Positions 10,634 through 55,614 of a stretch of DNA of 64,000 nucleotides are shown here, piece by piece (the first letter of the stretch is position 1; every line of letters starts with the position of its first letter). Origin of the DNA: Blastocladiella emersonii ATCC 22665 (lineage: Eukaryota; Fungi; Blastocladiomycota); contig JANHCV010000008.1 of assembly GCA_025594325.1 (NCBI GenBank), positions 62,001-126,000 of the forward strand, given 5' to 3'. The position numbers and the translations under genes are program-made. A model generated the notes under the pieces. It was not told the DNA's origin, searched no databases, and saw only the letters and a program-made list of their open reading frames with translations.

Positions 10634-11758
10634 ATGCAAACGAGCTATACCGTACCGGCGGGCGAAATCCCGCTCTTCGTCGGGGTCACCATCGCGACGG
10701 CCGTCTTGTGCATCGTTTGCTTTCTGATCAGCGGCGCGGAAATCGCGGTTCAGCTCAGCAAACAATGGATTCACAGCAGCGGCCTCGTCGCCTCTACCGG
10801 CGGGACCCTGCCTCGCTCGTCGCATCGGCGCTCATGTCGGGACTTTGATTACGTGCCGTATTTGATGATGATCACGACGATCACGACTGGGGCCTTGATC
10901 TTCATCAACGTCCACGCCATCGCCAGTCCCGAGTTCCCCCGCGTCAACAATTTCTATCCGATTCAAACCAGCTCTGGTCTCGTTCAGTCCTCATTCATTG
11001 GAGCGACCTCCAACTTGATCATGGTCCGCCGCGTCAAGTCAGTCTGCATCAAACGGACGCGCTTGACACGCGCACTCGCTCCCATTACGGTCGTCATGGC
11101 GGCGATCATGATTGCCGTCAACCTCGTCATCGGCTACCTGCACGCTGAGCAGGTCATGAGCGAAGGCGGCAACTGGTCGACGTTCGAGATCCGGCCCATC
11201 TTGCTGATCCTCAACTCGGTCCAGGCGCTGTGGGGCATCATCTGCACCATCTACGCGTACCGGTCCGCCTTCTCGAACACGTCTCACGCGCGCGTGACGG
11301 GATCGGTCGCCAATCTCAGCACCGCCGCGCGCACCGGGCCGCCCCTGTCGAGCAACTCGTCGGGTTCACACGCCCACGAAGTGATGTCGAGCCGCTCGGG
11401 TCAGCACCAGCACCTCCTCGCATCGGTCCAGCAGACGTACTTGGTCCTCACGATTTCGTACGCAGTCGGCTGGGCCGCGTCGCTGACCTTCTTGGGGACC
11501 TCGGGCGCGTTCATGAGCGTCGGCCCGCGCTGGACCCTTGCGTCGATGTTTGCGTGCGCCGGGATCCTCCAAGAGACGCAGTTCCGGCGCATCGTGCGGT
11601 CGCGCGTCAACAAGGGCAAGCAGCTCGATAAGCGAGCCGTCATGCACTTTGACGACACCATGGCGACGGCGACTGTGGCGGGGACCACAGCGGCATCCGA
11701 GCTTGGAGCATCGACGCATATTGAAAGTTCTGAAGCTGTTGTATACAAAGAACCCTGA
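10634..11758 (+). CDS. 7TM GPCR-like membrane protein, group A
   Basis: Intronless, seven hydrophobic segments. Motifs Y.VP..EIPL, FDYVP, RRVK.VCIKRT, AY.SAF, ETQFRRIVRSR, RAVMHFDD. Confidence 0.8.
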   Translation: MQTSYTVPAGEIPLFVGVTIATAVLCIVCFLISGAEIAVQLSKQWIHSSGLVASTGGTLPRSSHRRSCRDFDYVPYLMMITTITTGALIFINVHAIASPEFPRVNNFYPIQTSSGLVQSSFIGATSNLIMVRRVKSVCIKRTRLTRALAPITVVMAAIMIAVNLVIGYLHAEQVMSEGGNWSTFEIRPILLILNSVQALWGIICTIYAYRSAFSNTSHARVTGSVANLSTAARTGPPLSSNSSGSHAHEVMSSRSGQHQHLLASVQQTYLVLTISYAVGWAASLTFLGTSGAFMSVGPRWTLASMFACAGILQETQFRRIVRSRVNKGKQLDKRAVMHFDDTMATATVAGTTAASELGASTHIESSEAVVYKEP

Positions 11759-12084
11759 TTGGTTGCGTTGAGCTTTGAAACCCTGCCTCAAGGTGACTGA
11801 GTAGCCCTGACGCACATATCCGTGGACCGCAAGGCTGAAATGAAATCTCAACCTGGACCGCGGGAAACTGAGCGGTAGATGTGAAAGGTGTCAGTTCAGC
11901 CCTGTGTCTTCACGTCGCGTGGCACTCTCCGGAGAAAATGGTGGGAGACAGCTCGGCCCGGTTGCGAGACGCGTTCCGATATCACGTGGAGTGAGGAGAC
12001 ACGCAAAATTGTAGTGAGTCTGGTGGTCGTTTTCCCTCCTCTACCTACGAAAATCATGAAAAGCCAGACGCAATACTCCATGCA

Positions 12085-13245
12085 ATGAACAGCTATACTG
12101 TCCCCGCGGCGGAAATCCCGCTGTACATTGGGCTGACGGTCGGGACTATTGTCACTTGCCTGGCCTGTTTGGCCGTTAGCGCCGTCGACATCGTAGTGCA
12201 GTTGCGAAGTCAAGCTCGACGTGATCCAGCAGTGGCCCCCGTCTTGACGCTACCTCGCTCATCAGCTCAGCGGCGGCGGTCATGTCCGAGCTTCGATTAC
12301 GTGCCGTTTGTGATGGTGGCCAGCGCGCTCTTTGCCGGTGCACTCGCTGTAGTCAGCCTCTATGCGATCTGCCAGCCGTCATTTCCGTTGATTCGAGACT
12401 ACTACTCGCTACACGTCCGGATCGGCCACGTCCAGTCGTCGCTGCTGGGGAGCTTCTCAAACGTAATCATGCTGCGCCGTGTGAAGACCATCTGCATCAA
12501 ACGCACGGGCTTGTTTCGCTTCATCACACCCGTCACGGTCACGCTTGCGCTCGCTATGGTTCCCGTAAACGTGACCATCGGCTACCTCCACGTTGAGCAA
12601 GTCGCCGCGACGACTGGGGCGTGGGCTAGTTTCGAGATCCGGCCCATTCTCTTGTACCTCAACGGCGGCCAAGCGCTTTGGTGTATCGCTTGCACCGTCT
12701 ACGCCTACCGGTCCGCCTTTGCCGGCTCCGACTCTGGGCACGCCGCAAAGCCGAGCATCGGCACACGCGTCTCGGCGTCCTTCTCGCGCGTGAAAACCAG
12801 CGCTGCCGTGCGCACGGCATCATCGACCACGTCCTCGTCGTCCCACTCGACGCCAGGTCCACCCGACCTACAATTGGGGTCTCGTGGCGGCGGTATCCGG
12901 CAGCACCTTCTCGCATCGGTCCGCCAAACGTACGCGGTGCTCACGCTCATCTACATTATCGGATGGATCGCCTCGCTCGTCTTCCTCGGCACGTCCGGCG
13001 CGTACCTGAGCATGGGTCCGCGGTCGCTTCTTTCGTCACTTCTCGCGTGCGGCGGGATCCTCCACGAGACGCAGTTCCGCAAGATTGTGCGTTCGCGCGC
13101 GACCCGCGGCACGCGCGTGGGCAAGCGCGCGGTGATGCACTTTGAAGACACGATGGTGGCCTCCGTCGCGCCAGCGAAGTCTATAGCCCAGGACGGCGAG
13201 GCGCAGTCGACTGAGAGTCTCGGGGAGATTGAAATATCGTCGTAA
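12085..13245 (+). CDS. 7TM GPCR-like membrane protein, group A (tandem paralog of 10634)
   Basis: Same motifs, seven hydrophobic segments, Ser-rich loop between TM5 and TM6. Confidence 0.82.
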   Translation: MNSYTVPAAEIPLYIGLTVGTIVTCLACLAVSAVDIVVQLRSQARRDPAVAPVLTLPRSSAQRRRSCPSFDYVPFVMVASALFAGALAVVSLYAICQPSFPLIRDYYSLHVRIGHVQSSLLGSFSNVIMLRRVKTICIKRTGLFRFITPVTVTLALAMVPVNVTIGYLHVEQVAATTGAWASFEIRPILLYLNGGQALWCIACTVYAYRSAFAGSDSGHAAKPSIGTRVSASFSRVKTSAAVRTASSTTSSSSHSTPGPPDLQLGSRGGGIRQHLLASVRQTYAVLTLIYIIGWIASLVFLGTSGAYLSMGPRSLLSSLLACGGILHETQFRKIVRSRATRGTRVGKRAVMHFEDTMVASVAPAKSIAQDGEAQSTESLGEIEISS

Positions 13246-13517: not shown

Positions 13518-14771
13518 ATGAAAGCATCGACCACCGCGAGCTATGTGATTCCAGCGTGGGAGCGCGACTTGTACCCGCGCGCGGCGCTGCTCGCACTGGC
13601 CATTGCCATGACGACTTTGGCCATCGTCTACGTCCTGACCTTCTGCCACCTCGAGGCGCCTCCTCTGGCGCTCCGCGTCCTCCCACGCACACGAAGGAAA
13701 TCATGGGTCGCACGCGCGCTGGACGCGGCCGGCCGGACTCGACACCAGTGGCACCGTCCGGGCCGGCGCAGCTCGCTGATCCTGGTCCTCGGCGCGCTTT
13801 TCGTCGGACAGGCGCTCAACGACGTGTGGGCGGCGTTCGGGCCGCGGTACCCCGAGGTCGAGCTGTGGCCCGCGTACATCAATGTGCGGCTCGCGCTGAT
13901 GGGCCCGTCTGGCGGGATCGCGACCATGATCCAGATCGACCGCACCGCCGCGCTGTGCTTCAAGTCGGCGACGACGCGGCGGCGGATGTGGGCCATGGCC
14001 GTCGCCGCGTGGCTCGTCGTATCGCCGCTCAATATCGTGTGCTCCGTGCTCGACGCGATGGACCTGATCGAGAAGGGCGGCAACTGGGCCGAGTACACGG
14101 GCCCGGCGTGGCTGTTCTCGATCAACCTCGTGTTCCCGATCGTCAGCGTCGTCGCCACGCTCGTCACGCTGCGGACGTCGTTCCAGATGGCGAGACCGAC
14201 GGGCAGCATTGCGGGATGGCGACCGAGCTGGCCGTCGCGCACTGGATCTGAAAAGTCGACGGTCAAGGTGCTCGTGGACGGCACCGCGGCCGTCGCGGAC
14301 CCCAAGGTCAAGGCGACGCGGTCGGCCGACGACGACCACTCGGCCGTGACGCTTCCTTCGCCACATCCCCGCTCACCCCTCGGCTCGGACCTCCTCGTCG
14401 CACCACCACCTATCTCGCGCCCCACCTCCTCAACATCCACGATCCCGGCGCCAGCGCCGTCACACGTGCAAGCGTCACTCGACTGGACGCTCAAGTCGCT
14501 GTGCGTGCTGTCTTTGGTGATGTGGGGCGCGTCGAGCGCGATCACGCTGGGCGCGGCCGATTTCTCGCCGGCGCCGCGGTTCTGCATCTCGGCCATGGCG
14601 GGGACGCCCGCGCTGCTCGTCGAGGCGCTGTTCAAGAAGCTGGTCCGGGTGCGCGTTGGGCGGCGTGCGGCAAGGCAGCGGAGTCTCATGCACTTCGAGT
14701 CGCAGCAGCAGCAGCCGGGCGCGACGGTGGTGGATGATGGCGGGTTGACGACGACGGTGGATAATAGATGA
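13518..14771 (+). CDS. 7TM GPCR-like membrane protein, group A (divergent)
   Basis: SYVIPAWE, YPEVELWP, DRTAALCFK, LRTSF, SLDWTLKSL, EALFKKLVRVR, SLMHFES. Likely start is ATG 13518. Confidence 0.75.
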   Translation: MKASTTASYVIPAWERDLYPRAALLALAIAMTTLAIVYVLTFCHLEAPPLALRVLPRTRRKSWVARALDAAGRTRHQWHRPGRRSSLILVLGALFVGQALNDVWAAFGPRYPEVELWPAYINVRLALMGPSGGIATMIQIDRTAALCFKSATTRRRMWAMAVAAWLVVSPLNIVCSVLDAMDLIEKGGNWAEYTGPAWLFSINLVFPIVSVVATLVTLRTSFQMARPTGSIAGWRPSWPSRTGSEKSTVKVLVDGTAAVADPKVKATRSADDDHSAVTLPSPHPRSPLGSDLLVAPPPISRPTSSTSTIPAPAPSHVQASLDWTLKSLCVLSLVMWGASSAITLGAADFSPAPRFCISAMAGTPALLVEALFKKLVRVRVGRRAARQRSLMHFESQQQQPGATVVDDGGLTTTVDNR

Positions 14772-14959: not shown

Positions 14960-17059
14960 ATGGCCGGCTACACGCTCCCGCCCGGCGAGGCGGCCCTGTT
15001 CCGCATGCTGATGTGGATCGCAGTGCCGCTGGCCGCGCTCAACCTGGTCGCCGCGTGTTACATTTACGCGGTCAGCCGGCAGCGACACTTCCAGCCCGAT
15101 TTCTCTTCGTCGTCACCCGCGCATCCGTCGCCGTCGTACTCGAGCGACGTGTCGAGCGAGGCCGCCATGGCCGCGGCGCGGCCGAGCATCAGCGGCGTCA
15201 GCGGGATCTCGGGTCTGACGGGCGCAAGGCGGCGGCGGCACCGCGCGTGGCTGCGGCACCTGAGCCGGCGACTCCTGGCGCGGTCGACGCTGGTGCTGAC
15301 GGTGGCCGTGTGCCTTGCGGTCGAGACAGCAAACAACCTGCACATGCTGCTCTCTCCAACGTACCCGGAAGTGGACATGTACCCGCTTTTCATGCTGACG
15401 CGGGCCTCGTTCATGATGCCCATGGCGCCGCTCATGAACCTGCTGCTGGTCGCGCGGCTGTCGCGGCTGTGGGTCAACCAGCTCACGTACCGGCGCGACT
15501 GGACGCTGTGGACGATGCGCAGCGTGAGCATCGTGCTGATCCCGTTCAATATCGTCGGGTATATCATTGCCGCGGCGGTGACGAAAGCGACGGGCTCATT
15601 TCTCCACTTTGCCGTGCCGTGGATGACCTACGCCAACGCGATCTTGCCCATCCAGGGCCTCTCGATTACCTTCTACACGATGCACGTCGCGTTCGCGCAC
15701 GTCCCGCTCACGCGCCGCCAGATGCTCGGGTCCGACGCCGACATGCTGCGCGACGAGGCGCCCAGCGGTGGCGGGAGCAAGAGCGGCGCCGTGGCCAGCT
15801 CTGCGTCGGGCAACGTCCAGTCTTCGGTCGCGATCCCGCTCACCTCGCCGTCGACCGACCACCGCCTGGCCGCGCGCTCGCCGTCTGAGCCGATGCTCAA
15901 CAGCCCGCCCGGGATCGCGCCGCTCCCCGTCCTTGGCGCCGCGTCCGACGGCACCCTGCCCGCCGCGCAACCAAGGAAGCAGTCCGTCTTTTTCCCGGGT
16001 GTCGACCAACAGCAGCCGTCCGCTCCAAGGACGCCGCCGCCGCCGGTCCGCGTGACGACGGGTCTCTCGGCGTCGTCCATGTCGCGGCTCACGACCGACT
16101 CCTCGCGGCGCGACCTGCGGCTCGCTGGTCTAGCCGGGTCGCCGGCGTACTCGATGGGCACGGCGGCGCGCGCTTCGCGGTCGCTCAACCACCTCGCATC
16201 GACGTCGGCGCTGCTCGCGGCATCCTCGGCCGCGCCGGCGTCGCCCATGTCCCCGTCGCCGCTCCTCCCCCCGCCTCCACCGCTGCTCACCGCCGTCCCC
16301 GTCGCGCCACCCGCGGTCCGGCCGCGCGCGCCGACGGCCAACCCGCTGCAGCTCTCGCTCAACTGGACGTACCGGACCCTCACCCTCGTCTCGCTCGTGT
16401 GCTGGGTGCTGTACCTGGCGAGCCAGCTGGCGATCAACACGTACTCGCCGCTGGTGCGGTACGCCATGGCGATCCTGTCGACGCTGCCGGCGGCGATCGC
16501 CGAGACGCTCTTCTCGGTGCTCTTGCGCGCGCGCGCCCGCGTCGAGGTGTCCCGGTTCAAGCGCCGGTACACGGTGCTGCAGGGCGGCGGCGGCGGCGGC
16601 AGGGACGACGGGTCGGCGCTCGCGCTGCCGTGGCGCCGCCGCGTGGCGACGGGCGAGTCGGGCAGCAGTGCGGCGGCGCCGGGACTCGCGCGGACGGCGA
16701 CCGCCGCGGGTAGCAGCAGCCGCGTACTGTCGCGGTCGTCGCTCAACCTGTTCCGCGGCGCGGCGACCAGCAACGCGAGCCGCGGCGACGCAGAAGCGGC
16801 GGGGGTGGCGGCGGGCGAGCGGTGGACGGACCTCGACGCCCTCGCGCCGTCGCCGTCGAGGGAGAACCACGGCGGGATCGAGCCGACGCTCGCACGGCAC
16901 AACACGTACGCGGGCGCGCACGACCAGTTCTTTGAAGACTTTTCCGCGCTGCCGAGCCCGATCGACGACGAGGACGACGAGGACGGGGGCGTCGAGGTCG
17001 GCAGCGCCGGGCTCGCGGCCGCCGTCGGTGTGCTCAAGGACGCCGGTGCAGCGGGTTGA
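14960..17059 (+). CDS. 7TM GPCR-like membrane protein, group A (very long third loop and tail)
   Basis: GYTLPPGE, YPEVDMYP, SLNWTYRTLTL, ETLFSVLLRAR. Seven hydrophobic segments with a >200-aa Ser/Pro-rich loop after TM5. Confidence 0.75.
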   Translation: MAGYTLPPGEAALFRMLMWIAVPLAALNLVAACYIYAVSRQRHFQPDFSSSSPAHPSPSYSSDVSSEAAMAAARPSISGVSGISGLTGARRRRHRAWLRHLSRRLLARSTLVLTVAVCLAVETANNLHMLLSPTYPEVDMYPLFMLTRASFMMPMAPLMNLLLVARLSRLWVNQLTYRRDWTLWTMRSVSIVLIPFNIVGYIIAAAVTKATGSFLHFAVPWMTYANAILPIQGLSITFYTMHVAFAHVPLTRRQMLGSDADMLRDEAPSGGGSKSGAVASSASGNVQSSVAIPLTSPSTDHRLAARSPSEPMLNSPPGIAPLPVLGAASDGTLPAAQPRKQSVFFPGVDQQQPSAPRTPPPPVRVTTGLSASSMSRLTTDSSRRDLRLAGLAGSPAYSMGTAARASRSLNHLASTSALLAASSAAPASPMSPSPLLPPPPPLLTAVPVAPPAVRPRAPTANPLQLSLNWTYRTLTLVSLVCWVLYLASQLAINTYSPLVRYAMAILSTLPAAIAETLFSVLLRARARVEVSRFKRRYTVLQGGGGGGRDDGSALALPWRRRVATGESGSSAAAPGLARTATAAGSSSRVLSRSSLNLFRGAATSNASRGDAEAAGVAAGERWTDLDALAPSPSRENHGGIEPTLARHNTYAGAHDQFFEDFSALPSPIDDEDDEDGGVEVGSAGLAAAVGVLKDAGAAG

Positions 17060-21705: not shown

Positions 21706-22896
21706 TCACGACGTCGGCGGCTTCCGCAACTGCGCGACCCGCGCGACCCGCGCGCCCTTCCGCGCCTGCCGCCTGCGCCGCCGCTTGAGCACCGTCTCAA
21801 ACGAGATCTCGGCCAGCAGCGCCGTAACCCCCGTCGCCGTGAGCACCGTGCCCGGCTGGATCGGGATCAGTGTCGGCCACAGCAGCACGACCATCATCAC
21901 CAGCAGGTCGACGATGAACACCGCCGTCAGCACCTTGAACGTCGACGTGACGGGCACCTGCAGCCCGGGCGGCCGGTTCTGCGCGACGAACGGCGCCGCC
22001 GCGGCCAGGGAGCGCGTGGAGACTTTGAGCGCCGCGGTTGACGTCGACGCGGCGGCGAGCGAATGCGTCGAGGCGGCGGCAAGGAGGCCGGAAGAACCGC
22101 GCAGCTCGTCCTTGTGCGGAACGGTCAGCGCCGACTGCGACACGGCAGTGGCCGCCGGGTCGGGTGTGAAGCTGCGCGAGCCCAACTCGCCCGTCGACGA
22201 AAGCTTGCCCGCGCTCCCGTGGCCGCCGCTAAGGGCGCCGCCCGAGTTCGAGTCTGCGGCCTCGATGGTCAAGAACGAGTTGGTGAAGGCGATGCGCAGC
22301 GACATAAGCGAGCCGGTCACGATGATGGCAGGGTACGCGCACATGGGCACGACCGCGTAGCTGGGCAGCAGGCTGACGGACGACCACAGCGCCGGATCGT
22401 TTTGCTGGATCAGGTACGCGAGGTTCCAGATCCCGACGGCCTCCTGGAAGATGAACACGGCCGCGCACACAAAGTAGACGACGGCCATGAAGCGTTTCCG
22501 CCAGGTCGGGTTGGCGACCACGATCAGCGAGTTGCGGTGCGCGACGGTGATCGTGAGGCACATGCCGAACGGCACGAACGACATGAGGAACCAGATCTGG
22601 GCCGACGTAAAGTTGGTCGACCCGGACGTCCAGAGATCAAGGTACGTCGTGAAGTTGTTGAGCGCGTCCGTGCCCGCGAGAAACGAGAGCAGCGCGAGAA
22701 GGCGGATACGCGACGTGGATCGGGTCCCGCCCCACGGCGCATAGACGCGGCCTGCGAGCGAGGGCACCGAGCACAGGCACATGACGACGAACGCCAGTCC
22801 GGTGATGGCCGTGAAGGTGCCGCAGACGATGGTCGAGAGCGCGATGTTGTGCGCCACCTCGAACCATATCGAGCACGAACCGTGTGAGTGATCCAT
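21706..22896 (-). CDS. 7TM GPCR-like membrane protein, group B (subgroup B1)
   Basis: Intronless, seven hydrophobic segments. HRNSLIVV after TM3, SLRIAF after TM5, TSTFKVLT, AEISFE followed by a basic tail. Confidence 0.82.
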   Translation of the reverse strand: MDHSHGSCSIWFEVAHNIALSTIVCGTFTAITGLAFVVMCLCSVPSLAGRVYAPWGGTRSTSRIRLLALLSFLAGTDALNNFTTYLDLWTSGSTNFTSAQIWFLMSFVPFGMCLTITVAHRNSLIVVANPTWRKRFMAVVYFVCAAVFIFQEAVGIWNLAYLIQQNDPALWSSVSLLPSYAVVPMCAYPAIIVTGSLMSLRIAFTNSFLTIEAADSNSGGALSGGHGSAGKLSSTGELGSRSFTPDPAATAVSQSALTVPHKDELRGSSGLLAAASTHSLAAASTSTAALKVSTRSLAAAAPFVAQNRPPGLQVPVTSTFKVLTAVFIVDLLVMMVVLLWPTLIPIQPGTVLTATGVTALLAEISFETVLKRRRRRQARKGARVARVAQLRKPPTS

Positions 22897-23207
22897 TTTA
22901 TGAGCTGCATCAACTTGGGTGCGAGCATGGAGTGTCTAGCATGCGAGCGTTCATGCACTGCGAGGACACTTGACGAGTGTCGACCCGCGCGCATCGAATG
23001 TCTCCCGCGTGATACGCGAAAACTTGCGTTTTGTTCCTGAACAACGCGTGACCGCGCGCATCGTTCAGCTCCACGTGACGCATCGCAATAGCTATTTCGA
23101 TAGGTTCGAAGGTCAGGTTCAGTTGCTTTTTAGTAGCTTGAAGCGCAGCAGGAGTTAAATAATCAGGGCTAGTATAATTCAGTACTGGCGGTCTAGTTCG
23201 GCCACGC

Positions 23208-24416
23208 TCATGACGGCGACTTCCGATCCTGCGCAACCCGCGCCCCGCTGCGGCCCTTGCGCGCCTGCCGCTTGCGCCGGCTCTTGAGCATCGACTCGAA
23301 CGAGATCTCTGCCAGCAGCGCCGTGACGCCCGTCGCCGTGAGCACCGTGCCGGGCTGGATCGGGATCAGCGTCGGCCACAGCAGGACGAGCAGCATGAGG
23401 ATCCAGTCGAGAATGAAGACCACCGTGAGCACCTTGAACGTCGACGTGACGGGGACCTGGAGCCCGACGGACCGCTTGGGTGGCGGCGGTAGCGCTGCGA
23501 CCGAGCCCTTGAGCGGCGACGTGGACGCGACCACGACCGTCAGCGCCTTGAGCGAGTGGGCCGACGTGTTGGCCATGGCCGATGCCGAGACGGTGGCCTC
23601 CGACAACTCTTCCTTGTGCGCGAGTAGGGGCGCGGGCGATGCGGGCGTTGGCGACGCCGGGTCGTGCGTGATGCTGCGCGAGCCCGCCTCGTTGGACGAC
23701 AGCTTGCCGTGGTGGCTCGCGGTGCCCTGGACGCTGCTACCGGCGCCGGCCGCGCTCGACGACTCGGTTGTCGCCTCGATGGTCAGGAATGAGTTGGTGA
23801 AGGCGATGCGCAGTGACATGAGCGAGCCCGTGACGATGATGACCGGGTACGCGCACATCGGGACCACGGCATAGCCGGGCAGCAGGCTGACCGACGACCA
23901 CAGGTCCGGGTCGTCCTTCTGGATGAGGTATACGAGGTTCGAGATCCCGACGACTTCTTGGAAAATGAACACGGCCGCGCAGACGAGGTAGACGACGGCC
24001 ATGAACCGTTTCCGCCACGTGGCGTTCGACACGACGATGAGCGAGTTGCGGTGCGCGACCGTCAGGGTCAGGCACATGCCGAACGGCACGAACGAGATCA
24101 TGAACCAGACCTGCGCGGACGTGAAGCTCGTCGACCCGGACGTCCACAGGTCCATGTACGTCGTGAAGTTATTCACGGCGTCGGCGCCGGCAAGAAACGA
24201 GAGCAGGGTGAGGAGCCGGATGCGCGGCGTCGATCGGGCGGTGCCCCACGGCGCGTAGACGTAGCCCGCGAGGAACGGGATCGACCGCAGCAGCAAGATG
24301 ACGAACGTCGGCACGGTTATCGCCGTGAAGATGCCGCACACGATGGTCGAGAACTCGATGCTGTCCGATACGGCGAACCATATCGAACCCGACCCGTGCT
24401 TTTCGGGATTCATCAT
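23208..24416 (-). CDS. 7TM GPCR-like membrane protein, group B (B1)
   Basis: Close tandem paralog of 21706 with the same motifs. Confidence 0.82.
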   Translation of the reverse strand: MMNPEKHGSGSIWFAVSDSIEFSTIVCGIFTAITVPTFVILLLRSIPFLAGYVYAPWGTARSTPRIRLLTLLSFLAGADAVNNFTTYMDLWTSGSTSFTSAQVWFMISFVPFGMCLTLTVAHRNSLIVVSNATWRKRFMAVVYLVCAAVFIFQEVVGISNLVYLIQKDDPDLWSSVSLLPGYAVVPMCAYPVIIVTGSLMSLRIAFTNSFLTIEATTESSSAAGAGSSVQGTASHHGKLSSNEAGSRSITHDPASPTPASPAPLLAHKEELSEATVSASAMANTSAHSLKALTVVVASTSPLKGSVAALPPPPKRSVGLQVPVTSTFKVLTVVFILDWILMLLVLLWPTLIPIQPGTVLTATGVTALLAEISFESMLKSRRKRQARKGRSGARVAQDRKSPS

Positions 24417-24775: not shown

Positions 24776-26060
24776 TCAACTCGATCCGCAAGGTAGCCTC
24801 CACTGCCGGAGACTCATCGAGTCCATGTTCTCCTTGCGCGCCTGCCGTATGCGGCGCCGCTTGAGCATCGACTCGAACGAGATCTCGGCCAGCAGCGCCG
24901 TGAGCATCGTGCCCGGCTGGATCGGGATCACGGTCGGCCACAGGAGCATAAACAACATCAAGATCCAGTCGAGAATGAAGACCACGGTCAGCACCTTGAA
25001 CGTCGAGGTGACGGGAACTTGCAGCCCGAACGAGCGCTTGGGCGGCGCGGACAACGACGAGGGGGCGTGGACACGCGGCTGGACGTCGAGCCCTTGAGCG
25101 GCAGGCTCGACGCCGACAGCTGCGCGTTGAGCGACGACGTCGAGTGGGGTAGGGCGAGCGAAGTGGCCGACAGCGGCGCGGCGAGCGACGAGGCCGAGGT
25201 GTTGGCCTCGTCCTTGGCCGGGACCAGAAGGCCGGTCGAGATGGTCGACGACGGGTCGTTGATGACGCTGCGCGAGCTCGAAGGACTGGAGGTGAGCTTG
25301 CTTGACGGGCTGGAGATGAGCTTACCGTGATGAAAGCTCGGGGTGCGCGCGAGACTAGTCGCACAGCCGCCGCCCGCGCTGCTGGCCGCGCTCGACGACG
25401 ACTAGTCGGTAGTCGTGATGGTGATGACCGAGTCGTTGAAGGCGATCCGCAGCGACATGTGCGAGCCGGTGACGATGATGATGGGGTAGGCGCACATGGG
25501 CACGACCGCGTAGCCTGGCAGTAGACTGACCGAAGACCAAAGTTGCGGGTCGTCCTTTTCGATCAGGTACGCGAGGTTCCAGATCCCGATGGCCTCCTGG
25601 AAGATGAACACGGCCGCGCACACAAAGTAGACGGCAATCATGAAGCGCGTGCGCCACGTCGGGTTGGTTACGATAATCAGCGAGTTGCGGTGCGCGACCG
25701 TGAGCGTCAGGCACATGCCAAGCGGGACGAACGAGACCAGGAACCAGACTTGGGTCGAGGTGAAACTCGTGGACCCAGACATCCATAGGTCGAGGTAGGT
25801 CGTGAACTGTTGACGGCATCGGCGCCCGCGAGGAACGAGAGGAGCGTCAGTAGCCGAAGCCGCGGCATCGGCTTGAACTTGGCCCACGGCGCGTAGATGC
25901 GGCCGGCGACCGCATGGAATGTGCGGAGGAGCGTGACTGCAAACGTGGGGACCGTGATCGCGGCAAAGATTCCGCAGATCACGGTCGAGAATCCAATGTT
26001 CTCGGACACGGCGAACCAGATTGAGCCCGAGCCGTGCGAGCTGTGCTCTGAATGATCCAT
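24776..26060 (-). pseudogene. 7TM group B (B1) pseudogene
   Basis: 1-nt frameshift near 25810 (DAVN|FTTY), TAG at 25402..25404, frameshift near 25070, and a 15-nt deletion between two GCCGTGA repeats in TM7. Confidence 0.85.
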
Positions 26061-26523
26061 TTTTGTCCACTGTTTACGTTTGATCTGGGGACACGCTATT
26101 CAGGGGTCGGAGGACGGGTTACGGTGGGCGGGCGAGCAGGGGGCGGCACGGAGGGGTCTGGTGCCATGTCAACCCCGCCCCCGGTAGCCCACGCGCGACC
26201 TGGTAAATCGCGATCAAGGGTCTCCCAATCTGCCCGGGATGAGTGCGGCCGGGCCTGGTTTGACACGATGTGACGGCGGTCGGTTGATCCGGTCTCCCAC
26301 GGCCTGCAAGCCTTGCGCGAACTGGACTTGACGCGATTTCTCCCACTCGTGCGGTGCGATGGGATCATTAAGTGAACTCAACCGGCAGCGCCGATGCGCG
26401 GCGATAGAGAGCGCACAGCCGAAGCTGATCGCGCGTTGTTCATAACACGTGCAGTCCCGCGGGAAGATGAAACAAGCACATTCTACATTTTGGGAACAAA
26501 AATGACCGCCTTCCGCTCATCTC

Positions 26524-28162: not shown

Positions 28163-29241
28163 TTACATGGATGACGGCACAATCGACATCCCCGCAACGT
28201 GGAAGCTCTGTTTTCGCCCCGCGGCCCTCCGCTAGATCTCCTCGCGCTCGTGGTTTTGCCTGAGCAGCCAATCAAAGGAGGCCTCGGTGACCGCCATGAG
28301 CGAGGCAATGAAGCTTGAGACGGAACTCGCGCGGACCGGCAGCGGACTCGGGACGAGCACCAGGATCGCGAGCCACTCGAAGATCATGATCGCCGTCAGC
28401 GACTTGAACGAGCGGGTCAAGACGATCTCGAGCCTTCCGCGCCGTGGTCGCGTACTTTTACTCGGAGAGGCCACGGACATAAGCGAGCTGGGCTTGAGCA
28501 ACGAGGCTGATCCAGCATGGGCCAGCGGAAGCGTGCTGGTCGACGTATCGCGCACCGTGGCCTGGATCTCGAGGGTGCCGCGCGACGGCCCGCTCGCCAG
28601 CGTGACCTTGCCGTCGGTCGAGGCGGTCCCCGCCGACGAAATGTTGCTGACGGACCGCATGAGCTGCGGATCGCGGAATGCGACGCGGAGCGATCAGAAG
28701 GCTCCGGCAAGCACCGTAGTCGGGAGAACGGAAAGTGGCAGTAGCGCCCAGCTACCGGATCGTCGAGGTGCGCAAGACGCACGATTTTGACGGCGCCAAC
28801 GATGAGTGTGAAGAGCGCGATGCAGAGTGCGAGAGCCGAGATAAAGCGGACCAGCCGGACACGCATGGCGCGGTCCTCGACGATGATCGGCGCGTGCCGT
28901 CGAGTGATGATCAGCGCGGCGAGCGGCAAGAGCGGGATGTAGAGAATCACGAAAAGTGAATGCGTCACGATAAACTTGGTGTCGAACCCGAGCCAAACGG
29001 TCACGGTGAAGTAGACCGCGTTGGCGGCATCGAGGATCAGGATGACCCCGAAGGCGAGCAGCAGAACGGGACGGGTCCGTTACCGCGAGCCCGGCGCCCG
29101 TTCTCGCCCATACCAGCGCGGCAAGGACACAAAGTACTTGAGAGCGAGGTAGCAGGAGGTCACGAGCGATATCAGAAGCGAGATGCTCGACACGGCGAGC
29201 GTGGAGATGGCTTGTAAATCCGTCAGCAAGGGCGGGCTCAT
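28163..29241 (-). pseudogene. 7TM group B (B3) pseudogene
   Basis: Starts MSPPLLTDLQAISTL. TAA at 29080..29082, deletion/frameshift near 28755, TGG>TGA at 28694, TAG at 28232. The ancestral tail FHVAGMSIVPSSM* is still readable to 28163. Confidence 0.85.
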
Positions 29242-38058: not shown

Positions 38059-38394
38059 GGTTGTGATTGTTGAGGAGGAGGAGGGGAGAGAGCGGGGGCG
38101 AGGCCGTCCTGCAAGTTCATCCTGCAGCGGCGACCATACGCCACCCGACGCGGGAGGAACAAGGCGCCGCTCGGCGGCCCCAGGCGTGGACCCACGCTGG
38201 CAGCCGCAGCGGTATCAAGATGAGCAAAAGCGGGTCCTGGTGCGGCCGATCCGTTGAAAAGGCGGAAGCGAGCGGGCGGGCAACGGCGGCGACGGAGCAG
38301 AGTGTGGCACCGGAAGAACTCGAGGCGGTGGCGGAGAGGCCCCATGTGGCGCAGCGCCTCGCCGACGTGTGGACATCACCGACGCGTCGCTCAT

Positions 38395-39807: not shown

Positions 39808-41073
39808 TCATGGCGCCGGGTTTTCATTCGAGGACAGAATACACGCCGGCACCACTGTCGCACTCATCCCGGTCACAACCACCGCGGCGCCCTCAACAGC
39901 GGCCTCGCCCTTTTCTGGCGCCGCCGGCACCCCAACCACCGCGAACTCCGCCATCGTCATCGCCACACTCTCGGGATGCCCTTCCCCCGCACGCACCTTC
40001 CGCCGCAACTTCTGCGTGCGTCGATGATCGCGCCGGACGACGTAGTCGAAACACAGCTCGGTGACCGCGGCCACGGACGCGAGGAACGCGATGATCCCCT
40101 GGCGCAGGATAAGCGGGACCGGGTACGCACCGAACCAGCACGACCACATGTACACGAACACGGCCGTCGTCGACTTGTAGCTCAGGGTGAGGGACTCTTG
40201 TAGCGGCGCGATGCGGCGGCGTGGGAGCGTGGGCAGTGGGGGCGGCGGAGGGTGAGGGGTGGTGGGCGACGGCAGCGACGTGGCCGAGCTGGGCGACGAT
40301 GGCAACGGGACTTGCCCGCCCGGCCGCGCGAGCATTGAGCGTGACAGGGACATGGACAGCGTCGACGCGCTGAACGCGATCGGCAGGCGGACCGACGACG
40401 AGCTAGCGCGCGGCAACCCTTCTGTATCCTCGAACGCGACTGCGAGCGCCTTGACCGTGGTCCCCGCGACCGTGACCGGCAGGAGGAACGTGAGGTACAG
40501 CGCCCACCGCGGGTACGCCGGGCCCTCGGCCAGCACGTGCGGGGTTCATTTTCCCCGCCATGACGACGACCGTGAACAGCGCCGCGCCCTCCTGGACCGC
40601 GAGCACCAGCAGCGCGACGCCTGTGCACACGGCGACGACGCGGTGCTGCCAGTCGCGGCTCGCGGCGGCCACCGCGACGTACCGCCTTGCCGCGTTCACG
40701 GTCGCGATCGACGGGATCGGGGAGATGAACATCAGGACCAAAGCGCGGCGCGGTGATGGGGCCGTACACGAGAAGATAAGTCATGGCCATGTAGTTGGCG
40801 GACCCGAACAGCGCGAGGACGCAGTGCACCCACACGAGCTGCGCGCGGACGGGGTCGAGGCCCGGCAGGCGTTGCCGTCGGCGGGTTGTTGTGGGGACGG
40901 CGACGGCGGGGACGGACGCGCGCTTGCTCCACCGCCGCAGCGGGTTCGGGATCCCCGGGAACGTGGACCCGCGCATCCACGACATGCAGAGCACCGAGGA
41001 CCACCGCGCCGAGCGCGGCTACGGCCATGGACGCCGCCGCGGTGGGTAGCGGGACGAGCGGGAGCGTGGCCAT
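39808..41073 (-). pseudogene. 7TM group B (B4) pseudogene, paralog of 38395
   Basis: Three frameshifts relative to the neighbour: +1 near 41000, a deletion of about 11 nt near 40755, and +1 near 40540. Confidence 0.85.
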
Positions 41074-47350: not shown

Positions 47351-48541
47351 CTACCCCCTCGCCTTCTCCGCGCTGCTCGTGTGCGACACCACAGCCATCG
47401 ACCCCTGCGCGCCGACGCCCGACCGCCCCGGATCCCCTCCCCCATCCCCCGCAACCGTATCCTCAAAATGCATGACCGCGCGCTCGCGCCCGCCACGACT
47501 GCCCAACGCCGCCCTCGTCCGCACGATGCGCCGGAACTGCGCTTCCAGCAAAATCCCCACGCAGAAGATCAGGCTCGCGACGCTCGCCCGCAGGATGATC
47601 GACATGTACGCGCCCGCGGTCCCGAGGAACACGAGCGTGACCGCCCACCCGCCGACGTAGATGGCCGTCAGCAGGGAGTAGGTTTGCCGGATCGACGAGA
47701 GCAGGTGTTGCCGCTGGTGCGACGCGCTGCCGCGGCGCGCGGCGGCTTCTTCGATGCCGGCGGCGCCGCCGGCGCCGGGTTGGGTGTGTGAGGAAGAAGA
47801 GGTCGCGGAGCGCGGGAGCGTCGTGGAGCCGGCGCGGAGCACGTTGGCGACGGACGAGGACAGACGCGCATTGAGCCCGAGGCGCAAGCGCGACGACGAC
47901 GACGCGGCGGTCGAGGTGTTGCTGAAGGCGGTCCCGTACGCGTGGACGGTGCACGCGACGCCCCAGACGGCCTGGACGGCGTTGAGCACGAGCAGGATCC
48001 CCGGCAGCTCGTAGTTGACCCAGTCGAGGTCCGCCCTTGCCGCGTCATCGATCTGGTTGGACGCGATGATGTAGTTGACGGGCACCATGGCCACGGACAT
48101 GGTGACAGTGACGGGCGTGATGACGGCGTGGAACCTTGTGCGCTTGATGCAGATGGACGTGACGCGCTTGAGCATGGCCAGGTTGCTGAAGCTCGCCAGC
48201 AGGGAGGCTTGGATGCACGCCAGCGTCGTCAGGTCCGGGTAGTAGTTGCGGATCACGGGGAACGCGGGCTGCGCGAGCGCGTGCAGGTTCGCAGCGCACC
48301 ACGAGAACGCGGCGATCGAGCTCAGCGACATCACGTACGGCGCGTAGTCAAAGGTGCGGCATGTGCATGACCGTGAAGGGCGTAATCGGCTGCTGGTGTT
48401 GGATGATGGGGCTCGGACGTGGAGCAGGTAGATCTCGGCAAAGCTCACGCCCAGGCACGCCACGCACGCCACGGTCCCGAGCACCGTCAGGCTCACGAAC
48501 AGCGGGATCTCGGCCGGCGGCAGGTGGTAGTCTTTCATCAA
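47351..48541 (-). CDS. 7TM GPCR-like membrane protein, group A
   Basis: YHLPPAEIPL, FDYAP, KRVTSICIKRT, AYGTAF, LLSSIRQTY, EAQFRRIVRTR, RAVMHFED. Confidence 0.82.
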   Translation of the reverse strand: MMKDYHLPPAEIPLFVSLTVLGTVACVACLGVSFAEIYLLHVRAPSSNTSSRLRPSRSCTCRTFDYAPYVMSLSSIAAFSWCAANLHALAQPAFPVIRNYYPDLTTLACIQASLLASFSNLAMLKRVTSICIKRTRFHAVITPVTVTMSVAMVPVNYIIASNQIDDAARADLDWVNYELPGILLVLNAVQAVWGVACTVHAYGTAFSNTSTAASSSSRLRLGLNARLSSSVANVLRAGSTTLPRSATSSSSHTQPGAGGAAGIEEAAARRGSASHQRQHLLSSIRQTYSLLTAIYVGGWAVTLVFLGTAGAYMSIILRASVASLIFCVGILLEAQFRRIVRTRAALGSRGGRERAVMHFEDTVAGDGGGDPGRSGVGAQGSMAVVSHTSSAEKARG

Positions 48542-48900: not shown

Positions 48901-50355
48901 ATGGGCGGCTACGTCCTCCCCGACCATGAAATTCTGCCGTACAAGATCTTGACCGTGCTGTCGCTGGTCTTCAGCCTCGCCAGCCTCGTCCTGTGCGTCC
49001 GCGATGCCCTCGGCAAGGTCGAGGCGCCACCCGCTGTCGCCGCGAAACCGGTGCCGCGCATCGAACCTCCGCCGCCGCCATCCGCTCGCGGCGGGACGCT
49101 GGCGCCGCTGCAGCCCGGCCATGACCCGTCGCCGCCGCCGCCCGACGATCGGGCCGCGCCCGAGACGCTGCAGCGTCCGCGCGCCAAGACGGCGTTCATG
49201 CGCCGCTCGTCGTCCGCGCACTACAACGTGGGCGGCGGCGCGTCCACTGCCGCGTCGTCCGTGCGCCGCCGAAACCGGCTCCGCGCGCTCCGCGCGCTCC
49301 GCACGGCGCTGCGCACGATCCTCGCCAACTGCGCGGACCCGCGGTGGCTCGCGCTGCTGTTCACGGCGCTCATGTCGCTCGCGCAGGCGTGCGCCGACAC
49401 GTGGCAGGCGTACCTTCGGCCCGGCGAGTTCCCGTACGTCGAAATGTACCCGGGGTACCTCGCGGTCCACTCGATCCCGATCTCGTTCATTGGGTCGACG
49501 TGCCACGTCATGATGACGGCAAGGGTCACCGAGATCTGCTTCAAGGACGCGCTGCGCGCACGGCGAACCATGTGGCTCCTCGCGACCGCCGTCGGGATCG
49601 TGTTCCCCGGACTCAACCTCGGGTTCGGGTTGCCCGTCGCGCTCGCGTGCGAGGACGCGGGGACGTGGCAGACGTGGACGATCCCGAGGTGGTTGATTCT
49701 GACCAACGGCGTCCTGCCGTGCATGGGTATCGCGTTCACCGTCTACACGTACCGCGTCGCGTTCCCGCCCGACGCCGCGCCCAGCAGCAGCAGGCGCGAC
49801 TCGACAAGGCGCGGGCTGCTGCGATTCTGGAAGCGACGCGCTGACAACAAGGCGGGAATGCCGACCACTGCGGCTTCGGCCTCGGCCGCGCACCTCACCG
49901 CGTCCACGTCCATGTCGCCCATCGCGACCCTGACGTCGTCGCCGTCGTCCAAGTCGATCCGCCCTTCAACCACCACCTCACCTCCCTCACCCAAACCCAA
50001 GCCCCGGAAACGCCGCAACCTGCTGCGCACGTCGATCCGCAACAGCTTCCGCCTGCATACGGCCGTCTACGTGGCGGCGTGGGTCGCGGGCATGGCGATC
50101 CTGGCCGCCGCCGAGCTCGTCACGCCCGTCCTCCGCGCGCCCGCGTTCGGGATCATCGGCGTCGTCGCCATCTCCGTCGAGTCGCAGTTCAAGTTTCTGG
50201 TGCGCGCGCAGGCCAAGGCCAGAAGGAGGGCGGCGCATACGGGCGAGGATTACTTTGATGATGAGTACGAGTCGGAGGAGGGGGGAGAGTCGACGGGGAA
50301 TACCGTCGGGTCGTCGTTCGCCGCGTCGGCCGCGTCCGCGGCGTCGGTTGGATAG
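48901..50355 (+). CDS. 7TM GPCR-like membrane protein, group A (divergent)
   Basis: GYVLPDHEI, FPYVEMYP, RVTEICFK, YRVAF, TSIRNSFRL, ESQFKFLVRAQ. Confidence 0.75.
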   Translation: MGGYVLPDHEILPYKILTVLSLVFSLASLVLCVRDALGKVEAPPAVAAKPVPRIEPPPPPSARGGTLAPLQPGHDPSPPPPDDRAAPETLQRPRAKTAFMRRSSSAHYNVGGGASTAASSVRRRNRLRALRALRTALRTILANCADPRWLALLFTALMSLAQACADTWQAYLRPGEFPYVEMYPGYLAVHSIPISFIGSTCHVMMTARVTEICFKDALRARRTMWLLATAVGIVFPGLNLGFGLPVALACEDAGTWQTWTIPRWLILTNGVLPCMGIAFTVYTYRVAFPPDAAPSSSRRDSTRRGLLRFWKRRADNKAGMPTTAASASAAHLTASTSMSPIATLTSSPSSKSIRPSTTTSPPSPKPKPRKRRNLLRTSIRNSFRLHTAVYVAAWVAGMAILAAAELVTPVLRAPAFGIIGVVAISVESQFKFLVRAQAKARRRAAHTGEDYFDDEYESEEGGESTGNTVGSSFAASAASAASVG

Positions 50356-53664: not shown

Positions 53665-54200
53665 GAAGGAGCGGACAACGCGCACCCCGGTAGGGCAGCG
53701 CAGTCCGCAGCCTGCAGCACAGCAAACGGTCACATTAACGCAAGATGCAGATCGGCCGGAAGAGTTCGAGCAGTGCGGGCGCTGCGGGTATGGCATACTG
53801 AGATGTCATAGCGGGGCGCGATGAGAGGCGCCTCGTTGGTTGAAAAGGTCTGCGGCGCACGATGTTGTGCCGTTCATCGACTGGAGGCGCGATGCCAACA
53901 TAGTTGCAGCAAGTTAGCGGGAGGTTCTATTCCATGGGATGCATAGCTTAGGGTTGCTGGGGAGCGAGATAGGGAACGCGGCGGCGGCAACAAGTTTGCC
54001 GCTGGGTCGCGTGTGTGGCGCTGCGCGAAATCTTCTCCACGCCCTCGCGACGCTTCTGCACCCTCTCTGCAACCACTTCCAATGTACTCGAATGAACTCT
54101 GAACGCCGAATCGGACTTTCTGCAATGTTAAACGGGTCCCTGGGCTTCGGAGGCTTCGGTTGCTGGTGCCTCGTGGGACAACTCGCCTGCGGACGCCGCC
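53665..54200 (-). repeat. Diverged direct repeat R2, copy b
   Basis: Homologous to 51291..51835. Confidence 0.7.
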
Positions 54201-54426
54201 AGGCCACGAAAAGCGACGCGAACAGCCCGGTACACTTGATGATGTGCTCTACACTAAATGATTCTACAGAGCCCGACGTGCTTGATCCAACAACTCACGA
54301 TGACGTTACCTGGCGCCTGCGAGCTTCCCGCGCTCGCGTCGACTTGGCCTTGAGGGGTTACCGCTTCTTCTCAAGGAAGCTGACGCACGATCTGGTTTCC
54401 TCTGAGAACGAGAGTCATTTATGGTA

Positions 54427-55614
54427 TCAGGGGAGCTGAACCTCGTGTATTTCCACCTCATCGTCCTCAGTCGCATCCATCCCGCCCGTATTCTGCACGA
54501 CCACCGCTCCCTCCGCGGCATATTTGGGCGGGGCCACGCTGACCGTGCCCGCGACCGTATCCTCGAAATGCATGACCGCGCGCTTATCGATCCGCTTCTG
54601 CTTCTTGACGCGCGACCGAATGATGCGGCGGAACTGCATCTCGTGCAAGCTGCCCGCACACGCGACGATCGAGGTCAGCGACCAACGCGGCCCGATCGAC
54701 ATGTACGCCCCGGCCGCACCGAACAGCGCCATGGCCAACGTCCAGCACACCACGTACGAGAGCGTGAGCGTCTTGTACGTCTGCTTGACCGACGAGAGCA
54801 GGTGCTGCGTCTTCTCCTCCTTGCGCGGTGGAAGTTTGGGCAGTGCGGGGGTAGAGGATGAGGTGGTCGAGACGGAGCGGACGAAGCTGAGGCTCGCCAC
54901 GGTGTCGGTCACGCGCGAGCTGATCCCGCGCGAGTCGCGCGGTTCGCGCCGTTCGGCCGAAGGCGTGTAGAAGGCAAAGAAGTAGGCCACGATGTTGCAC
55001 CCGATGCCCCAGATACCCTGCAGCGCGTTGAGCAGCAGCAGTGCGTGGCCAATGTCGTACGTGGCCCACGGACCGCCCGCGCGTCCGACCTCCTCGACAT
55101 GATAATAGCCGACGGTCATGTTGACGGGGATCATGATCACTGCGAACGTGATTGTGACGGGCGCAATGATGCGGTACAGCAGGCTGGTGCGTTTGAGGCA
55201 CACGGACTGGACACGGCGCATCACGATCAGGTTGCTTGCCCCGCCCGCGATTGACGGCTGCACGAGGCCGACGTACGCCGTGACGGGGTAGTAGTCGAGG
55301 ATGACGGGAAACGACGGCTCAAAGAGCGAGTGGACGTTGGTCGCGGCCAGCGCAACCGACGAGGCCGAGGTCACGGCCATGAGGTACGGGACGTAGTCGA
55401 ACCCGACGCGAGATGATCGCCGTCTCGATCGCCGCCGCTTCACTGAGTCGTGGTTTGGGTGCTCCGCGGCGGATCCGCTTTGGAAGTGACTGCGGAGCTG
55501 GGCCACGACCTCGGACCCGCTGATGAGCAAGCACACGAGCGAGATGACCGCGTTGGCCACGACGAGCGCGATGTGCAGCGGGACTTCATCCGTCGGAATG
55601 ATGTAAGAATTCAT
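54427..55614 (-). CDS. 7TM GPCR-like membrane protein, group A
   Basis: MNSYIIPTDEVPL, FDYVP, RRVQSVCLKRT, LLSSVKQTY, EMQFRRIIRSR, RAVMHFED. Likely start is ATG 55614. Confidence 0.82.
   Translation of the reverse strand: MNSYIIPTDEVPLHIALVVANAVISLVCLLISGSEVVAQLRSHFQSGSAAEHPNHDSVKRRRSRRRSSRVGFDYVPYLMAVTSASSVALAATNVHSLFEPSFPVILDYYPVTAYVGLVQPSIAGGASNLIVMRRVQSVCLKRTSLLYRIIAPVTITFAVIMIPVNMTVGYYHVEEVGRAGGPWATYDIGHALLLLNALQGIWGIGCNIVAYFFAFYTPSAERREPRDSRGISSRVTDTVASLSFVRSVSTTSSSTPALPKLPPRKEEKTQHLLSSVKQTYKTLTLSYVVCWTLAMALFGAAGAYMSIGPRWSLTSIVACAGSLHEMQFRRIIRSRVKKQKRIDKRAVMHFEDTVAGTVSVAPPKYAAEGAVVVQNTGGMDATEDDEVEIHEVQLP

What the first reader, a model, noticed from the sequence alone, without database searches (positions are those of the whole stretch)
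10634..55614. A second group of seven 7TM genes that aligns motif-for-motif with the array: one superfamily of about 20 genes in 45 kb
Seen in sequence: genes at 10634, 12085, 13518, 14960, 47351, 48901 and 54427 share an N-terminal Y.(L/V/I)P..E, (Y/F)P.(V/I)..Y, R....C.K after TM3, Y..AF after TM5, S...TY..LT before TM6 and E.QF..(I/L)VR after TM7. These sit at the same positions as group-B RRHA.I.V, W.L+VAF, LT.SF..LT and TE.SF..LL. Inference: groups A and B descend from one ancestral receptor and diversified deeply.
Basis: partly seen in the sequence, partly recalled or inferred. Interest (0 to 1): 0.75.

Follow-up and report, generated by a model that had tools for sequence, protein, structure and literature searches.

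The report
Orphan blastoclad 7TM receptor superfamily
Twenty intronless seven-helix membrane-protein genes packed into 45 kb of the water mould Blastocladiella emersonii do belong to one ancient, unnamed family with the fold of G-protein-coupled receptors, found only in blastoclad fungi and probably used to sense chemicals.

Summary
The observation and the inference both hold. The window lies on the 1.80-Mb contig of Blastocladiella emersonii ATCC 22665. It has exactly 20 loci of one 7TM family: 7 intact group-A genes and 13 group-B loci, of which 10 are intact and 3 broken.

The A and B profiles match at hhalign probability 99.1%, E 7e-19, over 283 columns. Reversed and column-shuffled controls give E of 0.03 or worse. 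The TM1-5 and TM6-7 halves each match on their own. Profiles built only from homologues outside the window repeat the result at E 5e-29.

A search of 1.84 billion representatives found only 114 relatives. The 27 relatives that carry an organism name are all Blastocladiomycota and all "hypothetical". None matches Pfam. In the tree, A-type and B-type clades separate at 99% support. Both contain Catenaria and Allomyces, so the split is old.

An Arg at the TM3 cytoplasmic end and a Glu at the TM7 end are invariant in 81 members. Cytoplasmic helix halves are more conserved than outer halves. Both groups share an ACGCGT+CACGTG promoter module. A receptor function is inferred, not shown.

The scan had already noted the B array and another such array elsewhere in this genome.

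The parts
10634..11758 (+). A1, intact group-A 7TM gene (374 aa)
   Evidence: ORF. Family HMM E 2e-103. AF2 model with 7 helices, pLDDT 73.5. GC3 0.80.
12085..13245 (+). A2, intact group-A gene (386 aa)
   Evidence: 50% identical to A1. HMM E 3e-111.
13518..14771 (+). A3, divergent group-A gene (417 aa)
   Evidence: 22% identical to A1. Sister to Catenaria P0012 in the tree, SH-aLRT 99, so P0012 is its probable orthologue.
14960..17059 (+). A4, divergent group-A gene (699 aa) with a very long third cytoplasmic loop and tail
   Evidence: Alignment. HMM E 7e-87.
21706..24416 (-). B1 and B2 (21706-22896 and 23208-24416), intact group-B genes
   Evidence: 70% identical to each other. dN/dS 0.37.
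24779..26099 (-). Broken B copy 1, related to B2 and split over three frames
   Evidence: tblastn pieces. Six-frame HMM pieces.
26524..27984 (-). B3, intact group-B gene (486 aa)
28235..29292 (-). Broken B copy 2, related to B4 and split over three frames
   Evidence: A 142-aa fragment is annotated publicly (P0056).
29452..35866 (-). B4-B8, five intact tandem group-B genes (29452-30585, 30799-31926, 32096-33217, 33406-34527, 34793-35866)
   Evidence: B7 model has 7 helices, pLDDT 72.6. dN/dS 0.34-0.41 among B4-B7.
36922..39648 (-). B9 and B10 (36922-38058 and 38395-39648), intact divergent group-B genes
39811..41018 (-). Broken B copy 3, related to B10
   Evidence: Publicly annotated as H9P43_006626, with gaps in the model where the reading frame changes.
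47351..48541 (-). A5, intact group-A gene (396 aa)
48901..50355 (+). A6, intact divergent group-A gene (484 aa), divergently transcribed from A5
   Evidence: It gives the best direct A-B BLAST hit (A6-B2, E 7e-6). The B-only HMM hits it at E 4e-16 (P0007).
54427..55614 (-). A7, intact group-A gene (395 aa)
10523..10560 (+). Example of the shared promoter module (ACGCGT-N8-CACGTG-N11-ACGCGT), 80-111 bp upstream of A1
   Evidence: Equivalent modules lie upstream of A2, A3, A5/A6, A7, B1, B2, broken copy 2, B4 and B6.

Best explanation
The 20 loci are members of one ancient 7TM protein superfamily restricted to Blastocladiomycota. It has the GPCR fold and GPCR topology: N-terminus outside, C-terminus inside, and a long Ser/Thr/Pro-rich third cytoplasmic loop.

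The A and B types diverged before Blastocladiella, Catenaria and Allomyces separated. Each type then expanded by local tandem duplication with gene death, which left three broken B copies.

The most likely function is a diversified repertoire of plasma-membrane chemosensory receptors. In this reading the variable outer half binds different ligands. The conserved cytoplasmic face passes the signal to a common transducer, most simply a heterotrimeric G protein. That face comprises the invariant Arg at the end of TM3, the invariant Glu and near-invariant Phe at the TM7/helix-8 junction, and the 'AF' and 'T..F/Y..LT' motifs at the ends of TM5 and TM6.

Both groups carry the same ACGCGT+CACGTG upstream module, so they are probably expressed together.

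What is shown: common ancestry, fold, topology, taxonomic restriction, purifying selection, the conservation pattern and the shared promoter module. What is inferred: membrane location, ligand binding and G-protein coupling.
For: Homology:
- hhalign A vs B: 99.1% probability, E 7.4e-19. Controls give E of 0.03 or worse.
- The two halves are separately significant.
- Replicate without window sequences: E 5e-29.
- The A-only and B-only HMMs each hit proteins of the other type.

Fold:
- All top Foldseek rows are GPCRs.
- The helices of the two models coincide in the alignment.

Topology: Lys/Arg concentrate in loops 1, 3 and 5 and in the tail.

Conservation:
- R133 and E314 are invariant in 81 members, and F317 scores 0.95.
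- Cytoplasmic helix halves score 0.39 against 0.31 for outer halves, p 1e-4.

Real genes: dN/dS 0.34-0.44 and GC3 0.75-0.92.

Restriction: 114 relatives among 1.84 billion representatives. Thirty were looked up; the 27 with an organism name are all Blastocladiomycota.

Tree: A and B clades at SH-aLRT 99.

Promoter: 13 of 17 ACGCGT/CACGTG pairs in the window lie within 300 bp upstream of family genes of both groups. The same module lies upstream of three tandem A-type genes on another contig.
Against: - No sequence-level link to any described GPCR family. Pfam gives none at E<=1 for 7 A and 3 B window proteins, and none at E<=0.01 for 69 outside homologues. PDB profile searches give nothing reproducible.
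- No expression data: no RNA run was listed.
- Nothing tested shows G-protein coupling or a cell-surface location.
- Language-model neighbours include THH1/TOM1/TOM3 and GPR137-like clusters. By my own knowledge, not tested here, such proteins reside on internal membranes.
Confidence: 0.6

Rival explanations
1. A and B are homologous 7TM proteins as above, but they are not ligand-sensing GPCRs. Instead they are endomembrane or otherwise non-G-protein 7TM proteins of the TOM1/THH1/GPR137/GOST (TMEM87) type, for example scaffolds or trafficking factors.
For: - The nearest language-model clusters for both A2 and B7 include THH1/TOM1/TOM3, a GPR137_N cluster and DUF7703.
- The atlas shape search lists GOST_TM clusters.
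Against: - Those scores (0.86-0.94) are in the range the tool itself calls leads only.
- No PF06454, GOST_TM or GPR137 Pfam hit at E<=1.
- Scaffold families of this kind are, to my knowledge, low-copy and conserved. This family has dozens of divergent paralogues, tandem arrays and pseudogenes.
Confidence: 0.2
2. The A/B similarity is not common descent. It is convergence or compositional similarity between two unrelated seven-helix families that happen to lie side by side.
For: - Pairwise identity between A and B is only 14-19%.
- The best direct BLAST hit is E 7e-6.
- Transmembrane proteins can inflate profile scores.
Against: - Reversed and column-shuffled controls drop to E of 0.03 or worse.
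- Out-of-register halves do not match.
- The same four motif positions align in two methods.
- Intermediate sequences score on both HMMs. P0012 gives A 2e-59 and B 1e-21; P0065 gives A 9e-15 and B 4e-16.
- The combined profile pulled in no other 7TM family from 1.84 billion proteins.
Confidence: 0.03
3. The family belongs to the seven-transmembrane ion-channel (insect gustatory/odorant receptor-like) superfamily rather than to the GPCR fold.
For: The profile of outside homologues hits Drosophila Gr43a at E 0.0037 over the TM4-TM5 region. Group A has TY and QF dipeptides that recall the GR TM7 motif (from my own knowledge).
Against: - The hit does not recur with the window-only or B-only profiles.
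- No OR or GR chain is among the top 50 structural matches of either model.
- Topology by the positive-inside rule is N-out, the opposite of that superfamily by my own knowledge.
- TY and QF lie on different helices here (TM6 and TM7), as the alignment shows.
Confidence: 0.03

Closest known systems
Class T (TAS2R bitter-taste) GPCRs
   Different: No detectable sequence similarity: no Pfam hit of any kind and sequence identity of 8-12% in the structural alignments. The third cytoplasmic loop is long (about 40-250 aa) and low-complexity. The conserved motifs differ (Arg at the TM3 end, E..F at the TM7 end). Found only in blastoclad fungi.
Class D fungal pheromone receptor Ste2
   Different: No STE2 Pfam hit. 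By my own knowledge Ste2 is single-copy, whereas this family has dozens of paralogues. Identity is 10% in the structural alignment.
Fungal glucose receptor Git3/Gpr1 family
   Same: UniRef names one B-clade Catenaria member (P0016) 'G protein-coupled glucose receptor regulating Gpa2-domain-containing protein'. By my own knowledge Gpr1 also has a very long third cytoplasmic loop.
   Different: P0016 and nine relatives give no Git3 hit in the current Pfam, even at E<=10. The name is not reproducible here.
Lineage-specific chemoreceptor expansions in general (for example nematode 7TM chemoreceptors and vertebrate V1R/TAS2R)
   Same: Birth-and-death evolution in tandem arrays: three pseudogenes each beside an intact sister gene, dN/dS about 0.35-0.44, variable outer halves and a conserved cytoplasmic face.
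   Different: This is an analogy of evolutionary mode only. No homology was shown and no ligand or transducer is known.

Membership tests
GPCR fold (7TM, rhodopsin-like architecture) at fold level | Seven transmembrane helices in the GPCR arrangement | tested here: met
GPCR fold (7TM, rhodopsin-like architecture) at fold level | N-terminus outside and C-terminus inside | tested here: met
   Positive-inside rule. In B4 the loops hold 0/8/1/7/1/7 K+R and the tail 7. In A1 the N-terminus has 0, ICL1 5, ICL2 2 of 5 residues, ICL3 3 and the tail 6. This is a prediction only.
GPCR (functional sense) | Couples to a heterotrimeric G protein or arrestin on ligand binding | not testable with these tools
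   Only indirect evidence: an invariant Arg at the TM3 cytoplasmic end, invariant Glu and near-invariant Phe at the TM7 end, and cytoplasmic halves more conserved than outer halves.
Any Pfam GPCR family (7tm_1, STE2, TAS2R, Git3, Dicty_CAR and others) | Match to the family HMM at or near the gathering score | tested here: not met
   No such hit at E<=1 for 7 A and 3 B proteins, at E<=0.01 for 69 outside homologues, or at E<=10 for 10 homologues.
Microbial (type I) rhodopsins | Retinal-binding Lys in TM7 | tested here: not met
7TM ion channels (insect OR/GR-like) | N-in topology, reproducible profile similarity and matching fold | tested here: not met
   The Gr43a hit at E 0.0037 comes from one profile only and is absent with two others. 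Predicted topology is N-out. No OR or GR is among the top structural matches.
THH1/TOM1/TOM3 - GPR137 | Match to PF06454 or the GPR137 models | tested here: inconclusive
   No Pfam hit, but language-model neighbours score 0.86-0.94. A profile-profile comparison against those families could not be run, because no tool supplied their sequences.

The most novel reading that the evidence does not exclude
This superfamily is the chemosensory receptor repertoire of blastoclad zoospores and gametes. It would then be the missing receptor layer for their chemotaxis to nutrients and hosts. Its Allomyces members would include the still unidentified receptors for the gamete pheromones sirenin and parisin. 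It would be a GPCR class that arose, or diverged beyond recognition, within one fungal phylum, with its own conserved Arg(TM3)/Glu-x-x-Phe(TM7) coupling switch.
Probability: 0.25. Interest if true: 0.75.

Novelty: new variant of a known kind. Interest (0 to 1): 0.5.

Why it matters
Zoosporic fungi swim towards chemical cues, yet to my knowledge no chemoreceptor has been identified for any blastoclad. The earlier GPCR surveys I could read were at least partly Pfam-based (PMC3251606, PMC9730499), and Pfam models do not detect this family.

The analysis defines a phylum-restricted family of at least 114 clusters at 50% identity. It shows that two sequence-dissimilar gene groups in one locus are its two ancient branches. 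It also pinpoints invariant cytoplasmic residues and a shared promoter module, both of which give direct handles for experiments.

In addition, the public B. emersonii gene models for this locus are wrong. Four A genes are fused into one model and four B genes into another, and one pseudogene is modelled as a gene with gaps at its frame breaks. This would hide the family from orthology-based surveys.

Tried and rejected
- Word-indexed protein search with A2 and with B7: blank. The exhaustive profile search was needed.
- Pfam on window proteins and on 69 outside homologues: nothing.
- The UniRef 'Git3-like' name for P0016 could not be reproduced.
- PDB sequence-profile searches gave only a Gr43a hit at E 0.0037 with one profile. 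It was not replicated with two other profiles and was rejected as chance.
- ESM Atlas shape search: uninformative. The best row was an unnamed cluster at TM 0.53/0.61.
- RNA evidence: no run was listed for 10600-16599, so read laying was not used and expression remains unknown.
- Supplementary Table S2 of the genome paper (54 GPCR genes in 8 orthogroups, 'tandem duplicated forms') is not held. I could not check whether these loci were already counted there.
- Direct superposition of the two models was not possible, because coordinates are not exposed. I used helix-register agreement and shared PDB matches instead.
- A simple Kyte-Doolittle TM scan was too noisy, so DSSP helices of the models were used.
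- ORFs next to the four promoter-like modules outside receptor promoters gave no Pfam match.
Full report
**What the window is.** The region is eukaryotic, GC-rich (58-73%) and fungal in content. It holds a Cse1/CAS exportin, a CBM18 chitin-binding plus NodB deacetylase gene, a PhoD-like phosphatase, LRR proteins and Harbinger transposases. Proteins identical to window ORFs sit in NCBI on a 1,801,506-bp contig. H9P43_006626 of Blastocladiella emersonii ATCC 22665 lies on a contig of that length and matches window 39811-40985 at 99-100%. The window is therefore B. emersonii.

**Checking the observation.** All seven group-A ORFs are intact at the stated coordinates. tblastn with the 17 intact proteins and a six-frame HMM scan find exactly 20 loci:
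- 7 group-A genes: four on the + strand at 10.6-17.1 kb, and three at 47.4-55.6 kb;
- 13 group-B loci, all on the - strand at 21.7-41.0 kb. Ten are intact and three are split over three frames.

Strict motif counts in group A are 7/7, 7/7, 6/7, 5/7, 5/7 and 4/7. Chance frequencies per shuffled sequence are 0.05 or less. The motifs are complete in A1/A2/A5/A7 and degenerate in A3, A4 and A6. The strict B motifs are those of the B4-B7 subgroup.

**Are A and B one family?**
- hhalign of the A alignment (A1, 7 sequences) against the B alignment (A2, 10 sequences) gives 99.1% probability, E 7.4e-19, over 283 columns from TM2 to the post-TM7 helix.
- The reversed B alignment gives E 0.1, and eight column shuffles give E 0.03-0.97.
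- The TM1-5 parts match at E 2.5e-8 and the TM6-7 parts at E 3.3e-11. N-versus-C cross comparisons give E 0.03-0.1.
- Direct BLASTP reaches 7e-6 for A6-B2.
- In the joint MAFFT alignment the invariant columns are the TM3-end Arg, and Glu and Phe at the TM7 end. The post-TM5 Phe and the pre-TM6 Thr are nearly invariant.
- The A-only HMM scores B-type proteins and the B-only HMM scores A-type proteins. Examples: P0007 (= A6) with the B HMM at 4e-16; P0012 at A 2e-59 and B 1e-21; P0065 at A 9e-15 and B 4e-16.
- Profiles built only from outside homologues (15 A-clade, 48 B-clade) match at 99.8%, E 5e-29, over 346 columns. The reversed control gives E 0.023.

**Structure.** Models were built from separate alignments, so they are not circular.
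- A1: pLDDT 73.5, pTM 0.68.
- B7: pLDDT 72.6, pTM 0.66.
- Each has seven long helices and a disordered third cytoplasmic loop.
- In the sequence alignment the helices coincide one-to-one, sharing 24-46 columns per helix and none off-register.
- Foldseek E-values are weak (1.5e-3 and 2.6e-2), but the top rows are all GPCRs.
- In model A the N-terminal Y.VP strand (residues 4-6) and a strand in the first outer loop (103-105) are the only two strands predicted, so they probably pair. These strands carry the two group-A-specific motifs.

**Topology and conservation.** Lys/Arg cluster in loops 1, 3 and 5 and in the tail, giving N-out and C-in. Across 81 family members A1 R133 (TM3 cytoplasmic end) and E314 (TM7 cytoplasmic end) are invariant, and F317 scores 0.95. 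Cytoplasmic helix halves are more conserved than outer halves (0.39 vs 0.31, Mann-Whitney p 1e-4). All four motifs shared by A and B lie at the cytoplasmic face.

**Are they real genes?** dN/dS is 0.34-0.44 for eight paralogue pairs, and GC3 is 0.75-0.92. No RNA run was listed.

**Distribution.**
- The joint profile found 114 representatives at E<=1e-3 among 1.84 billion proteins.
- Of 30 looked up, 26 come from named blastoclad species, all labelled hypothetical protein. The species are B. emersonii, B. britannica, Catenaria anguillulae, Allomyces macrogynus and javanicus, and Sorochytrium milnesiophthora. Three are unnamed JGI/IMG records, and one is the window's own.
- No outside homologue has a Pfam match.
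- PDB sequence-profile searches give nothing reproducible.
- A quick IQ-TREE of 81 rows separates an A clade (22 rows) from a B clade (59 rows) at SH-aLRT 99. Both clades contain Catenaria and Allomyces.
- Group A itself is three old lineages: A1/A2/A5/A7, then A6, then A3/A4. A3 is sister to Catenaria P0012.
- The N-terminal Y.[LVI]P..E motif marks 16 of 22 A-clade members and none of the 48 outside B-clade members or the 10 window B genes.

**Regulation.**
- Seventeen pairs lie within 40 bp of each other in the window.
- Thirteen of them lie within 300 bp upstream of family genes of both groups: A1, A2, A3, the shared A5/A6 intergenic region, A7, B1, B2, broken copy 2, B4 and B6.
- The other four lie inside a duplicated transposon.
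- On another B. emersonii contig, three tandem A-type genes each have the same module 90-190 bp upstream (L001).
- No such module is present anywhere in the 17-kb Catenaria locus that holds the A3 orthologue (L002).

**Interpretation.** Common descent of A and B is established as well as sequence analysis allows. The fold and topology are those of GPCRs. Several features fit a chemosensory receptor repertoire signalling through a shared cytoplasmic partner:
- tandem birth-and-death evolution with pseudogenes;
- moderate purifying selection;
- variable outer halves against an invariant cytoplasmic Arg/Glu/Phe set;
- a shared promoter module.

This reading is an inference. The main rival is a non-signalling endomembrane 7TM role, as suggested by weak language-model neighbours.

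**Literature.** The papers I could read mined GPCRs at least partly with Pfam models (PMC3251606; PMC9730499). The B. emersonii genome paper mentions 54 GPCR genes with tandem duplicates, but its table is not held. Prior notice of these loci therefore cannot be excluded.

**Annotation problems.** Public models fuse parts of A1-A4 into a 1316-aa protein (P0002) and parts of B8-B5 into a 1190-aa protein (P0001). A broken copy is modelled with gaps where the frame changes.

**Verdict.** It is a new sequence family of a known fold. It is of moderate interest in general and of high interest for zoosporic-fungus sensory biology.

Noticed in passing
window 10523-10560, 11969-11988, 13398-13419, 48721-48784, 55739-55761, 23044-23077, 24589-24622, 29360-29379, 30698-30721, 33321-33340; L001 7814-7848, 9211-9233, 10586-10605: A bipartite ACGCGT (MluI-box-like) plus CACGTG (E-box) module lies 70-240 bp upstream of most group-A genes and several group-B genes. 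It also lies upstream of three tandem family genes on another contig. This suggests one regulon across both groups. No such module is found in the 17-kb Catenaria locus that holds the orthologue.
   Followed up: partly
window 477-2693 and 59204-61419: A 2.2-kb inverted repeat, 99.7% identical, carries a Harbinger-type DDE_Tnp_4 transposase ORF (1602-2483- and 59413-60294+). The two copies bracket the entire receptor region. They are probably two recent insertions of one transposon, and they could mediate inversion of the 56-kb interval.
   Followed up: partly
window 11096-17044 and 30802-35824: Public B. emersonii gene models are chimeric. P0002 (1316 aa) joins parts of A1, A2, A3 and A4. P0001 (1190 aa) joins parts of B8, B7, B6 and B5. 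H9P43_006626 models the broken copy at 39811-40985 in three pieces that skip its frame breaks.
   Followed up: yes
L002 8001-14286 (Catenaria anguillulae MCFL01000028.1): P0012, sister to A3 in the tree, is a single gene there, not part of an array. It lies next to enkurin and IFT20 genes. By my own knowledge both are flagellum-associated. This may be coincidence.
   Followed up: no
window 29452-35866 (C-termini of B4-B8): Five B genes end in ...VPSF(L/M) or ...VPTFL. By my own knowledge the last three residues fit a class-I PDZ-ligand pattern (S/T-x-hydrophobic-COOH), which would suit a surface receptor. Group-A tails instead share RAVMHF(E/D)DT.
   Followed up: no
window 61047-61409 (-): The C-terminal 121 residues of H9P43_006731 (P0017) match this stretch at 92.6%. 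P0017 is a B-clade family member elsewhere on the same contig. The stretch lies inside the transposon repeat, so that gene model probably also fuses a receptor with transposon sequence.
   Followed up: no
L001 9315-11506: In the second B. emersonii array, gene 2 is split over two frames. Gene 3 lacks HMM positions 174-292, roughly TM5 and the third loop. Gene decay therefore also occurs in A-type arrays.
   Followed up: partly
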